Source: Stylophora pistillata (lineage: Eukaryota). Taken from it: DNA of 64,000 nt. The notes under the pieces were generated by a model. That model did not search any database. It saw only the letters and a program-made list of their open reading frames with translations, and had not been told where the DNA came from. Both the position numbers and the translations under genes were made by a program. The stretch is from contig NW_019218803.1 in NCBI RefSeq assembly GCF_002571385.2, positions 1 to 64,000 of the forward strand, given 5' to 3'. Shown here piece by piece: positions 51,458 through 51,570 of the stretch (position 1 is the stretch's first letter; each line of letters opens with the position of its first letter).

Positions 51458-51503
51458 ACTGCACTGATGAGGCCCAGAAGGCCGAAACAGTACTGTCTGC
51501 AGT
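51458..51503 (+). ncRNA. Type I hammerhead ribozyme (minimal stem III), intact core
   Basis: Stem I ACTGCA/TGCAGT; CTGATGA; stem II GGCC-CAGAA-GGCC; GAAA; stem III CAG-TA-CTG; GTC cleavage triplet, predicted cut after 51497. Confidence 0.88.
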
Positions 51504-51527
51504 TAAATATAAGTATATGTATCTTTG

Positions 51528-51570
51528 ATCCTCTGATGGGTGAGCAATCACGAAACAAGCTTGTAGGGAT
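51528..51570 (+). ncRNA. Second type I hammerhead ribozyme, A9G core variant
   Basis: Stem I ATCCT/GGGAT; CTGATGG; stem II GTGA-GCAA-TCAC; GAAA; stem III CAA-GC-TTG; GTA triplet, predicted cut after 51565. Confidence 0.72.

What the first reader, a model, noticed from the sequence alone, without database searches (positions are those of the whole stretch)
51458..51570. Two different minimal hammerhead ribozymes in tandem, 24 nt apart, each with a self-complementary stem III
Seen: two complete type I hammerhead folds on the + strand in intergenic DNA between tRNA-Asp and the membrane-protein gene. HHR1 has a perfect core with a GUC site; HHR2 has A9G with a GUA site. Their stems share no sequence, so this is not a recent duplication. 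Both stem III regions are perfect 10-nt palindromes (ACAGUACUGU, ACAAGCUUGU). Known: minimal type I hammerheads mark Penelope-like pLTRs and retrozymes, and palindromic stem III favours dimeric cleavage. Inference: this is a solo double-ribozyme pLTR or retrozyme-like unit, unrelated to the other PLE family in the window. Double cleavage would release a 68-nt RNA (51498-51565) that could circularise.
Basis: partly seen in the sequence, partly recalled or inferred. Interest (0 to 1): 0.82.

Follow-up and report, generated by a model that had tools for sequence, protein, structure and literature searches.

The report
Two adjacent hammerhead retroelement remnants
Both hammerhead ribozyme motifs are real, but each belongs to a different, abundant and already described coral mobile element (a 244-nt 'retrozyme' and the tail of a Penelope-like retrotransposon) that landed side by side in an AT-rich spot, so this is an ordinary pair of decayed insertions and not a new double-ribozyme unit.

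Summary
Two type I hammerhead (HHR) folds lie on the + strand at 51458-51503 and 51528-51570. Random sequence of this composition gives 0.01-0.05 such motifs per window.

The two are not one unit. HHR1 is the ribozyme of a 244-245-bp repeat. Its 39-nt ribozyme segment occurs 854 times in this roughly 398-Mb coral genome, in tandem arrays of up to 12 units. The repeat is visibly homologous to the Acropora millepora retrozyme clone Amil224, which was published and assayed in 2020. The window copy is solo and 5'-truncated (51337-51511).

HHR2 is the first 43 nt of a second family, with at least 443 candidate copies. That family is the 3' tail of a Penelope-like element (PLE). Longer copies run upstream into an ORF with a telomerase-like reverse transcriptase fold and a GIY...YIG C-terminus. 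ORF-bearing copies carry the same HHR about 90 nt after the stop codon, with a compensatory stem II change.

The A9G change and the perfect stem III palindrome of HHR2 are private mutations of this copy. The two ribozymes cannot pair with each other. Spacing between the two families differs at other loci.

The scan has already noted the same retrozyme arrays elsewhere in this genome. Verdict: known elements, low interest.

The parts
51337..51511 (+). Family A: solo, 5'-truncated copy of the 244-245-bp coral non-LTR retrozyme. It lacks the first ~72 nt of the unit.
   Evidence: 90-95% identity to at least 29 fetched copies. Full-length copies extend ~72 nt further 5'; arrays with a 244-245-bp period; homology to the A. 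millepora clone Amil224.
51458..51503 (+). HHR1: type I hammerhead with an intact core and a GUC site. Cleavage would fall between 51497 and 51498.
   Evidence: The 39-nt ribozyme segment (core to the start of the 3' strand of helix I) occurs 854 times at up to 2 mismatches, against 0 for the reversed control.
51504..51527 (.). AT-rich tail of A plus spacer. It is not conserved in either family.
   Evidence: copies of A diverge into (TA)-rich sequence after CUGCAGUU. B homology starts at 51528.
51528..51690 (+). Family B: 5'-truncated 3' tail (pLTR-type segment) of a Penelope-like element, with no ORF.
   Evidence: at least 443 candidate copies with a sharp common start; longer copies extend ~750 nt upstream. 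ORF-bearing copies carry the same tail.
51528..51570 (+). HHR2: PLE-type hammerhead, here with the A9G core mutation and a GUA site. Cleavage would fall between 51565 and 51566.
   Evidence: The consensus 39-mer occurs 232 times at up to 3 mismatches, against 0 for the control.

Best explanation
Two independent retroelement insertions lie next to each other in an AT-rich patch.

The left one (51337-51511) is a 5'-truncated single copy of the stony-coral non-LTR retrozyme. This is a 244-245-nt non-coding unit whose transcripts, when made from tandem copies, are cut by their hammerhead into monomers. In Acropora those monomers were shown to exist as linear and circular RNAs.

The right one (51528-51690) is the truncated 3' tail of a Penelope-like retrotransposon. 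That tail begins with a small hammerhead of the PLE type.

Both insertions were most likely made by PLE-type target-primed reverse transcription. This mechanism gives 5' truncation, partial tandems and inverted pairs, and favours microsatellite-like targets.

At this locus the copies are dead ends. HHR1 is alone: it has no second site to release a unit, and the head of the next unit, which closes loop 1, is missing. HHR2 carries a core mutation.

What is shown: family membership, boundaries, copy numbers, arrays, the link of B to an RT ORF, and homology of A to Amil224. What is inferred: the mobilising enzyme, the (TA)n target preference, and inactivity of these two copies.
For: Family A:
- At least 1049 candidate matches. 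The boundary at 51337 is a truncation relative to full-length copies.
- The HHR1 39-mer has 854 hits against 0 for the control, with arrays of 3-12 units at 244-245-bp spacing on contigs C8, C36, C2, C53, C71, C49 and C32.
- The supplement of PMC7229834 prints the clone 'Rtz Genom coral Amil224'. Its ribozyme is identical to HHR1 in helices I-III and core and differs only in loop 2. Its flanks share long runs with family A (compared by eye).
- That paper reports 220-240-bp arrays, kobs of about 0.8 per min, and circular RNAs in A. millepora.

Family B:
- At least 443 candidates. The consensus core is a perfect CUGAUGA. Copies commonly form head-to-head inverted pairs.
- Long copies extend into a region 72-79% identical to the 3' end of an ORF.
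- The ORF product has YRDD and GIY..YIG-like motifs and about 705-aa homologues, some with RVT_1 or GIY-YIG Pfam hits.
- Its predicted fold matches telomerase TERT best, E 1.5e-8.
- ORF-bearing copies have the same HHR 89 nt after the stop, with GUGG/CCAC in place of GUGA/UCAC.
- In the pair count, the stem II pair at columns 19-24 is AU in 35 copies, GC in 4 and GU in 1, and never unpaired.

Published PLE traits match: HHR in pLTRs, 5' truncation, inverted copies and microsatellite bias (PMC8557442; PMC4209133).
Against: - Self-cleavage was not tested for either copy or either family in this species.
- Rfam does not reach its gathering score for either motif.
- Pfam does not recognise the ORF of L076 itself. 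Its GIY-YIG identity rests on motifs read by eye, on the model's secondary-structure order, and on one homologue's Pfam hit.
- A and B lie close together far more often than their copy numbers predict. Pure chance adjacency is therefore not the whole story. I attribute the excess to a shared target preference, which I did not test.
- Covariation is thin: essentially one compensatory pair, possibly a single event.
Confidence: 0.9

Rival explanations
1. A and B together form one functional double-ribozyme unit (a solo pLTR or heterologous retrozyme). Its two cleavages release a 68-nt RNA (51498-51565) that can circularise.
For: Both motifs are on the same strand, 24 nt apart. A followed by B on the same strand at short distance recurs at L006, L007 and L049, with gaps of 174, 72 and 46 nt.
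Against: - The spacer differs in length and sequence at each locus, and no second copy of this junction was found.
- The released stretch would be an AT-rich tail plus most of HHR2, not a conserved unit.
- HHR2 here has A9G, while the family consensus has A.
- The heterodimer forms no shared helix III.
- RNA-library contigs cross both sites uncut (records 14 and 28), although contigs prove little.
Confidence: 0.03
2. The pair is a host-exapted element. The hammerheads process or destabilise the transcript of the neighbouring membrane-protein gene, in whose 3' UTR they may lie.
For: Contigs from RNA libraries of three studies run from the gene side (beyond 51836) across B and into A. The gene's last ORF ends at 52319 on the minus strand.
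Against: - The gene is on the minus strand and both ribozymes read on the + strand. Its mRNA would carry their inactive complements.
- My scan found no hammerhead on the minus strand.
- Both copies look like neutral decay products. Only 15 of 29 sampled A copies and 16 of 40 sampled B copies keep an intact core.
Confidence: 0.03
3. The motifs are chance look-alikes without ribozyme ancestry.
For: Neither reaches Rfam's gathering score. The monomer MFE folds do not form helix III.
Against: - The expected number is 0.01-0.05 per window.
- Both motifs are the consensus of large families with 0 hits for reversed controls.
- The HHR1 type was shown to self-cleave in A. millepora (PMC7229834).
- The HHR2 type sits where PLE hammerheads are expected and shows a compensatory stem II change.
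Confidence: 0.01

Closest known systems
Non-LTR retrozyme of the stony coral Acropora millepora (clone Amil224; Cervera and de la Pena, NAR 2020, PMC7229834)
   Same: Non-coding unit of about 220-245 bp and under 50% GC. It occurs in tandem arrays as well as dispersed copies. It has one canonical type I hammerhead with a 6-bp helix I, a 4-bp helix II and the same helix III (ACAGUACUGU) with a GUC site. Long shared sequence runs lie outside the ribozyme.
   Different: The species is different. Loop 2 is CAGAA instead of AGAAA, the unit is 244-245 bp instead of 224-240 bp, and parts of the body have diverged. The window copy is a single 5'-truncated unit, not an array, so it cannot release a monomer.
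Hammerheads in the pseudo-LTRs of Penelope-like elements (Cervera and de la Pena 2014, PMC4209133; Craig et al. 2021, PMC8557442)
   Same: Small type I hammerhead with a short helix I (5 bp) and a small palindromic helix III. It lies in the non-coding terminal region next to an RT plus GIY-YIG-type ORF. Copies are mostly 5'-truncated, often occur as inverted pairs on opposite strands 0-700 bp apart, and are widespread as single motifs.
   Different: Helix II is 4 bp with a GNRA-type loop, not the 6-8 bp with a bulge described for the Schistosoma and Drosophila variants. Most copies start exactly at the 5' edge of the ribozyme, which I did not find described. The PLE clade (Hydra, Neptune or Poseidon) was not determined.
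Classical repeat-borne metazoan type I hammerheads (newt satellite 2, Schistosoma Sm-alpha), as summarised in PMC4209133 and PMC7229834
   Same: A type I ribozyme carried in short repeats of a few hundred bp, with a weak palindromic helix III that allows double-hammerhead pairing between like copies.
   Different: No sequence relation was tested. The papers report that invertebrate retrozyme ribozymes, including the coral one, cleave well as monomers, unlike the newt and axolotl ones.

Membership tests
Hammerhead ribozyme, type I | Conserved core: C3 U4 G5 A6 N7 G8 A9, G12 A13 A14, an A15.1-U16.1 pair, and H17 that is not G | tested here: met
   HHR1 meets all positions. The window copy of HHR2 fails at A9 (it has G). 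The HHR2 family consensus and 16 of 40 sampled copies meet all positions.
Hammerhead ribozyme, type I | Three helices around the core, with helix I open and helices II and III closed by loops | tested here: met
   The descriptor scan requires all three helices. MFE folds of monomers form helices I and II but not III. Homodimer cofolds form the full double hammerhead, 8.8 to 14.1 kcal/mol below two monomers.
Hammerhead ribozyme, type I | Score at or above the gathering threshold of an Rfam hammerhead model | tested here: not met
   There are no hits at gathering score. HH9 matches HHR1 at 25.3 bits against a threshold of 52. HHR2 is not matched. Short helix III variants are known to be poorly covered by these models. 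This is a limit of the models and does not disprove membership.
Hammerhead ribozyme, type I | Site-specific self-cleavage | not testable with these tools
   Cleavage was published only for the A. millepora relative of HHR1 (PMC7229834). All available runs are contigs, which cannot show RNA ends.
Non-LTR retrozyme (metazoan) | Tandem repeats of 150-450 bp, each unit with a type I hammerhead | tested here: met
   This is met at family level, with arrays of 3-12 units at 244-245-bp spacing. It is not met by the window copy, which is a single truncated unit.
Non-LTR retrozyme (metazoan) | Non-coding, no LTR, PBS or PPT, and GC below 50% | tested here: met
   The unit is 244 nt with 48.8% GC and has no terminal repeats within it. 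No ORF of this family was seen. The only ORF over the copy is an 86-aa mechanical ORF on the opposite strand.
Non-LTR retrozyme (metazoan) | Expressed as linear and circular monomer RNA | tested here: inconclusive
   Summed contig depth over A is 250-540 times that of the flanks in RNA libraries. The family has at least 854 copies, so DNA carry-over or read-through would look the same. Contigs running from tail into head exist, but so do genomic arrays.
Non-LTR retrozyme (metazoan) | Sequence homology to a described retrozyme | tested here: met
   The clone Amil224 printed in the supplement shares the ribozyme and long flanking runs with family A. This was compared by eye, and no formal alignment could be made from the paper text.
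Penelope-like element terminal region (pLTR) | Lies next to a single ORF encoding a telomerase-like RT | tested here: met
   This is met at family level: L076 ORF 3104-6613 with the HHR at 6702-6744. The best fold match is TERT 3du5_A, E 1.5e-8. RVT_1 is hit only in a homologue, below its cut-off. The window holds no such ORF.
Penelope-like element terminal region (pLTR) | GIY-YIG endonuclease domain in the same ORF | tested here: inconclusive
   VIY...YIG, R..H and CxxC motifs are conserved at the C-terminus. The model's element order there is strand, strand, helix, helix, strand, helix. Pfam GIY-YIG is hit in one homologue only, at 26.2 bits against a cut-off of 22.6, and not in L076.
Penelope-like element terminal region (pLTR) | Insertion pattern: heavy 5' truncation, partial tandems, and adjacent inverted truncated copies | tested here: met
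   Copies start at varied points from 750 to 0 nt upstream of the HHR. Head-to-head inverted pairs occur at L035, L037, L043, L044, L046, L050 and L052. A tandem mini-array is present in L021.

The most novel reading that the evidence does not exclude
The excess of close A-B neighbours, several on the same strand with 17-174 nt between them, might be more than a shared AT-rich target. The retrozyme's (TA)-rich tail could be a preferred landing pad for the PLE machinery. Alternatively, such hybrid pairs could be transcribed and cut into small RNAs flanked by two different hammerheads, which would be a way for new retrozyme-like units to arise from PLE tails. A related open point: most B copies begin exactly at the 5' edge of the ribozyme, which hammerhead cleavage cannot explain.
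Probability: 0.06. Interest if true: 0.45.

Novelty: already known. Interest (0 to 1): 0.12.

Why it matters
There is little new biology here. Hammerhead-bearing retrozymes and PLE hammerheads in stony corals were described and tested in 2014-2020. This locus is a decayed example of each.

The practical value is for annotation. In this genome a hammerhead motif should first be assigned to its repeat family: about 850 or more HHR1-type copies, and 230 or more HHR2-type copies counted with one consensus 39-mer. Two different hammerheads side by side should not be read as a unit.

If the weak side observations hold (clustering of the two families, and the sharp 5' end of PLE tails at the ribozyme edge), they could bear on how PLE machinery chooses targets and on how retrozymes arise from PLE tails. 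A 2026 preprint argues for that origin from vertebrate data.

Tried and rejected
- Rfam at gathering score found only tRNAs. The permissive scan gave a sub-threshold HH9 match for HHR1 and nothing for HHR2.
- I checked whether B is half of a palindromic MITE into which A had inserted. This is rejected: no inverted B arm lies upstream of A in the window, many B copies are solo, and long copies lead into an RT ORF.
- My first guess for A was a tRNA-derived, Sm-alpha-like SINE, because of box-like strings. I dropped it: there is no tRNA call, and the family proved to be the coral retrozyme.
- Pfam on the L076 ORF, whole and in two pieces, and on 25 homologues gave almost nothing. A profile search of PDB sequences gave nothing. 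Only the fold search was informative.
- RNA evidence is limited. All 24 runs are Logan contigs, so ends, strand and circles cannot be read. The depth excess over A is of the same order as its copy number and is no proof of expression.
- Covariation on 40 B-type ribozymes is barely above shuffles: score 0.114 against 0.097, reached by 10 of 500 shuffles. One pair shows a real two-sided change.
I repeated it with the plain consensus.
I therefore could not fetch the array next to a PLE ORF on contig C2, and I did not try other routes.
- tblastn with the PLE protein found no ORF of this family in the window.

Full report
**Observation**

The sequence at 51458-51570 holds two complete type I hammerhead (HHR) folds on the + strand.

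- HHR1 spans 51458-51503. Helix I is 6 bp. The core CUGAUGA and GAA are intact. Helix II is 4 bp with loop CAGAA. The helix III region is ACAGUACUGU, followed by a GUC site. Cleavage would fall between 51497 and 51498.
- HHR2 spans 51528-51570. Helix I is 5 bp. The core reads CUGAUGG, that is G at position 9. Helix II is 4 bp with loop GCAA. The helix III region is ACAAGCUUGU, followed by a GUA site. Cleavage would fall between 51565 and 51566.

A descriptor scan of both strands of the window finds only these two motifs. The expectation is 0.01 (strict) and 0.05 (position 9 free) hits per window in random sequence of the same first-order composition. Rfam does not report them at gathering score. 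A permissive scan gives a sub-threshold HH9 match to HHR1 only.

**Two families, not one unit**

A search of the window's own genome (397.6 Mb) with 51230-51630 shows that only 51337-51511 is repeated, at 87-96% identity with at least 1049 candidate places. A search with 51520-51700 shows a second, unrelated repeat that starts sharply at 51528 and runs to about 51690, with at least 443 candidates. The boundary between the two falls in the 24-nt gap between the ribozymes. The gap itself is AT-rich sequence that differs between copies.

**Family A (HHR1)**

- Full-length copies extend about 72 nt further 5' than the window copy, so the window copy is 5'-truncated.
- The unit is 244 nt with 48.8% GC. 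Its circular fold is moderately more stable than shuffles, z = -2.4.
- The HHR1 39-mer occurs 854 times at up to 2 mismatches, against 0 for the reversed control. Many hits lie in arrays with a 244-245-bp period, for example 12 units on C8, two arrays of 6 units on C36, and 5 units each on C2, C53 and C71.
- The supplement of Cervera and de la Pena 2020 (PMC7229834) prints the cloned Acropora millepora retrozyme 'Amil224'. Its hammerhead has the same helices I, II and III, core and cleavage site as HHR1 and differs only in loop 2. The sequence on both sides shares long runs with family A (read).
- That paper reports 220-240-bp arrays from dimers to 62-mers, efficient co-transcriptional self-cleavage (kobs about 0.8 per min), and abundant linear and circular monomer RNA in that coral.

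Earlier notes of this scan call the genome a coral, and the RNA runs that hold this stretch are labelled coral metagenome. Earlier follow-ups on other windows reached the same identification of the 244-245-bp arrays. I reached it independently.

**Family B (HHR2)**

- The consensus of the copies starts with AUCCC, a perfect CUGAUGA core, helix II GUGA/UCAC, helix III region ACAGGCUUGU, and a GUA site. The A9G change and the perfect 10-nt palindrome of the window copy are therefore private mutations.
- Copies often form head-to-head inverted pairs joined at the ribozyme's 5' edge. One locus has a 79-nt tandem mini-array (L021).
- Some copies extend up to 750 nt upstream. That upstream part is itself repeated, with at least 620 candidates. 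In a younger subfamily it is the 3' end of a long ORF.
- The ORF of L076 is interrupted by an assembly gap, which I left as it is. It shows FxD, YRDD and, at the C-terminus, CxC...VIY...YIG...R..H...CxxC motifs.
- It has thousands of homologues of about 705 aa. A few carry sub-threshold RVT_1 or GIY-YIG Pfam hits. Pfam does not recognise the L076 protein itself.
- Its AlphaFold model (pLDDT 77.9) matches the telomerase catalytic subunit best, followed by other reverse transcriptases. That ranking is what is expected of a Penelope-like element (PLE) RT.
- In three ORF-bearing copies the same hammerhead lies 89 nt after the stop codon, with helix II GUGG/CCAC.
- Across 40 copies this helix II pair is A-U 35 times, G-C 4 times and G-U once, and never unpaired. 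The rest of the structure shows only the neutral decay expected of dead copies. Only 16 of 40 B copies and 15 of 29 A copies keep an intact core.

These traits match the published picture of PLEs: hammerheads in pseudo-LTRs, strong 5' truncation, partial tandems, adjacent inverted copies and microsatellite insertion bias (PMC4209133; PMC8557442). Family B is the tail of a PLE, and the window copy is a tail fragment without an ORF. The window holds no ORF of this family.

**How it works, and what this locus can do**

Shown: family identities, boundaries, arrays, and the ORF link.

Taken from the literature: retrozyme transcripts from tandem units are cut at each hammerhead into monomers, which are circularised, probably by a tRNA ligase. 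The retrozymes are thought to be copied back into DNA by PLE machinery (PMC7229834; the preprint 10.64898/2026.07.22.740005 argues from Xenopus that retrozymes derive from PLE pLTRs).

Inferred for this locus: both copies are inert.

- HHR1 stands alone, so one cut could at most split a + strand transcript. The head of the next unit, which closes loop 1 in arrays, is absent.
- HHR2 has a mutated core base.
- Cofolding shows that each ribozyme can form the classical double hammerhead with a second copy of itself: -38.2 against -29.4 kcal/mol for HHR1, and -26.7 against -12.6 for HHR2. The two together gain only about 2 kcal/mol and form no common helix III. They cannot help each other.
The coral retrozyme ribozyme is reported to cleave well as a monomer.

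**RNA data**

Only assembled contigs were available.

- Contigs from RNA libraries of three studies cover the locus and cross both predicted cleavage sites (records 5, 14, 21, 28).
- Long contigs run in from the side of the minus-strand membrane-protein gene, whose last ORF ends at 52319. The stretch may therefore be part of that gene's 3' UTR, which would carry the inactive complements of both ribozymes.
- The summed depth over family A is 250-540 times that of the flanks. The family has at least 854 copies, so this does not show expression.
- Contigs that run from the tail of A into its head match genomic arrays as well as circles.

I treat the RNA evidence as inconclusive.

**What remains odd**

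- A and B lie near each other much more often than their densities predict. Cases are the window, L006, L007, L049, L021, L033, L065 and L074, plus two further places seen by coordinates on C7 and C33. Spacing and orientation vary. I read this as a shared preference for (TA)-rich targets, which flank most copies, but I did not test it.
- Most B copies start exactly at the first base of helix I, just after an AATAAA in the longer copies. Hammerhead cleavage cannot produce that end.
- A five-unit A array lies about 340 nt 3' of a PLE ORF remnant on C2, on the same strand.

**Verdict**

The link to Penelope elements and retrozymes is right. The 'double-ribozyme unit releasing a 68-nt circle' is not supported. 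Both elements belong to kinds, and for HHR1 to a family, that are already published. Interest is low.

Noticed in passing
window 51337-51690; L006, L007, L049, L021, L033, L065, L074; G000:C7:446674-447064; G000:C33:410495-410711: Retrozyme (A) and PLE-tail (B) copies lie within a few hundred bases of each other far more often than about 1000 and 450 or more copies in 398 Mb would give by chance. In four cases A is followed by B on the same strand with 17-174 nt between them. A shared (TA)-rich target is my guess.
   Followed up: partly
L034, L035, L041-L060 (start of family B); window 51528: Most PLE-tail copies begin exactly at the 5' edge of the hammerhead's helix I, right after an AATAAA in longer copies. 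Head-to-head inverted pairs are joined at this same point with 0-12 nt between them. Ribozyme cleavage, 38 nt further on, cannot explain this end.
   Followed up: partly
L021:1194-1504: Three to four tandem 77-79-nt units, each consisting of the B-type hammerhead plus about 36 nt. This is a very small hammerhead mini-array next to a retrozyme copy.
   Followed up: no
G000:C2:2157694-2161032 (minus strand): A five-unit 245-bp retrozyme array lies about 340 nt downstream of a PLE ORF remnant (67-76% identical to the L076 protein) on the same strand. It is a possible autonomous partner of the retrozyme. The DNA could not be fetched.
   Followed up: no
window 51326-51340: The 11 nt just before and across the start of the truncated A copy (TTAGATATAGC) equal the tail-to-head junction of tandem A units. 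The copy may be a more-than-unit-length insertion with an internal deletion between two TAGC strings, not a simple 5' truncation.
   Followed up: no
L076:3104-6613; homologues P0001-P0120: A very large family of about 705-aa RT proteins (3252 database hits at E below 1e-5) is almost invisible to this copy of Pfam. Many homologues carry a precomputed PF26215 label that I could not look up. Its predicted fold matches TERT best.
   Followed up: partly
window 5430-5502, 42308-42381, 57501-57573, 59407-59483: Four tRNA-Thr-like matches of one repeat family (Rfam tRNA at 30-49 bits), besides a genuine-looking tRNA-Asp at 50579-50650 followed by a T16 run. Earlier notes of the scan describe this tRNA-like repeat family.
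   Followed up: no
window 51413-51836 and 52319-53122 (minus strand): Contigs from RNA libraries extend from the last ORF of a single-pass membrane protein gene across the PLE tail into the retrozyme copy. Both insertions may sit in that gene's 3' UTR, antisense to it.
   Followed up: no
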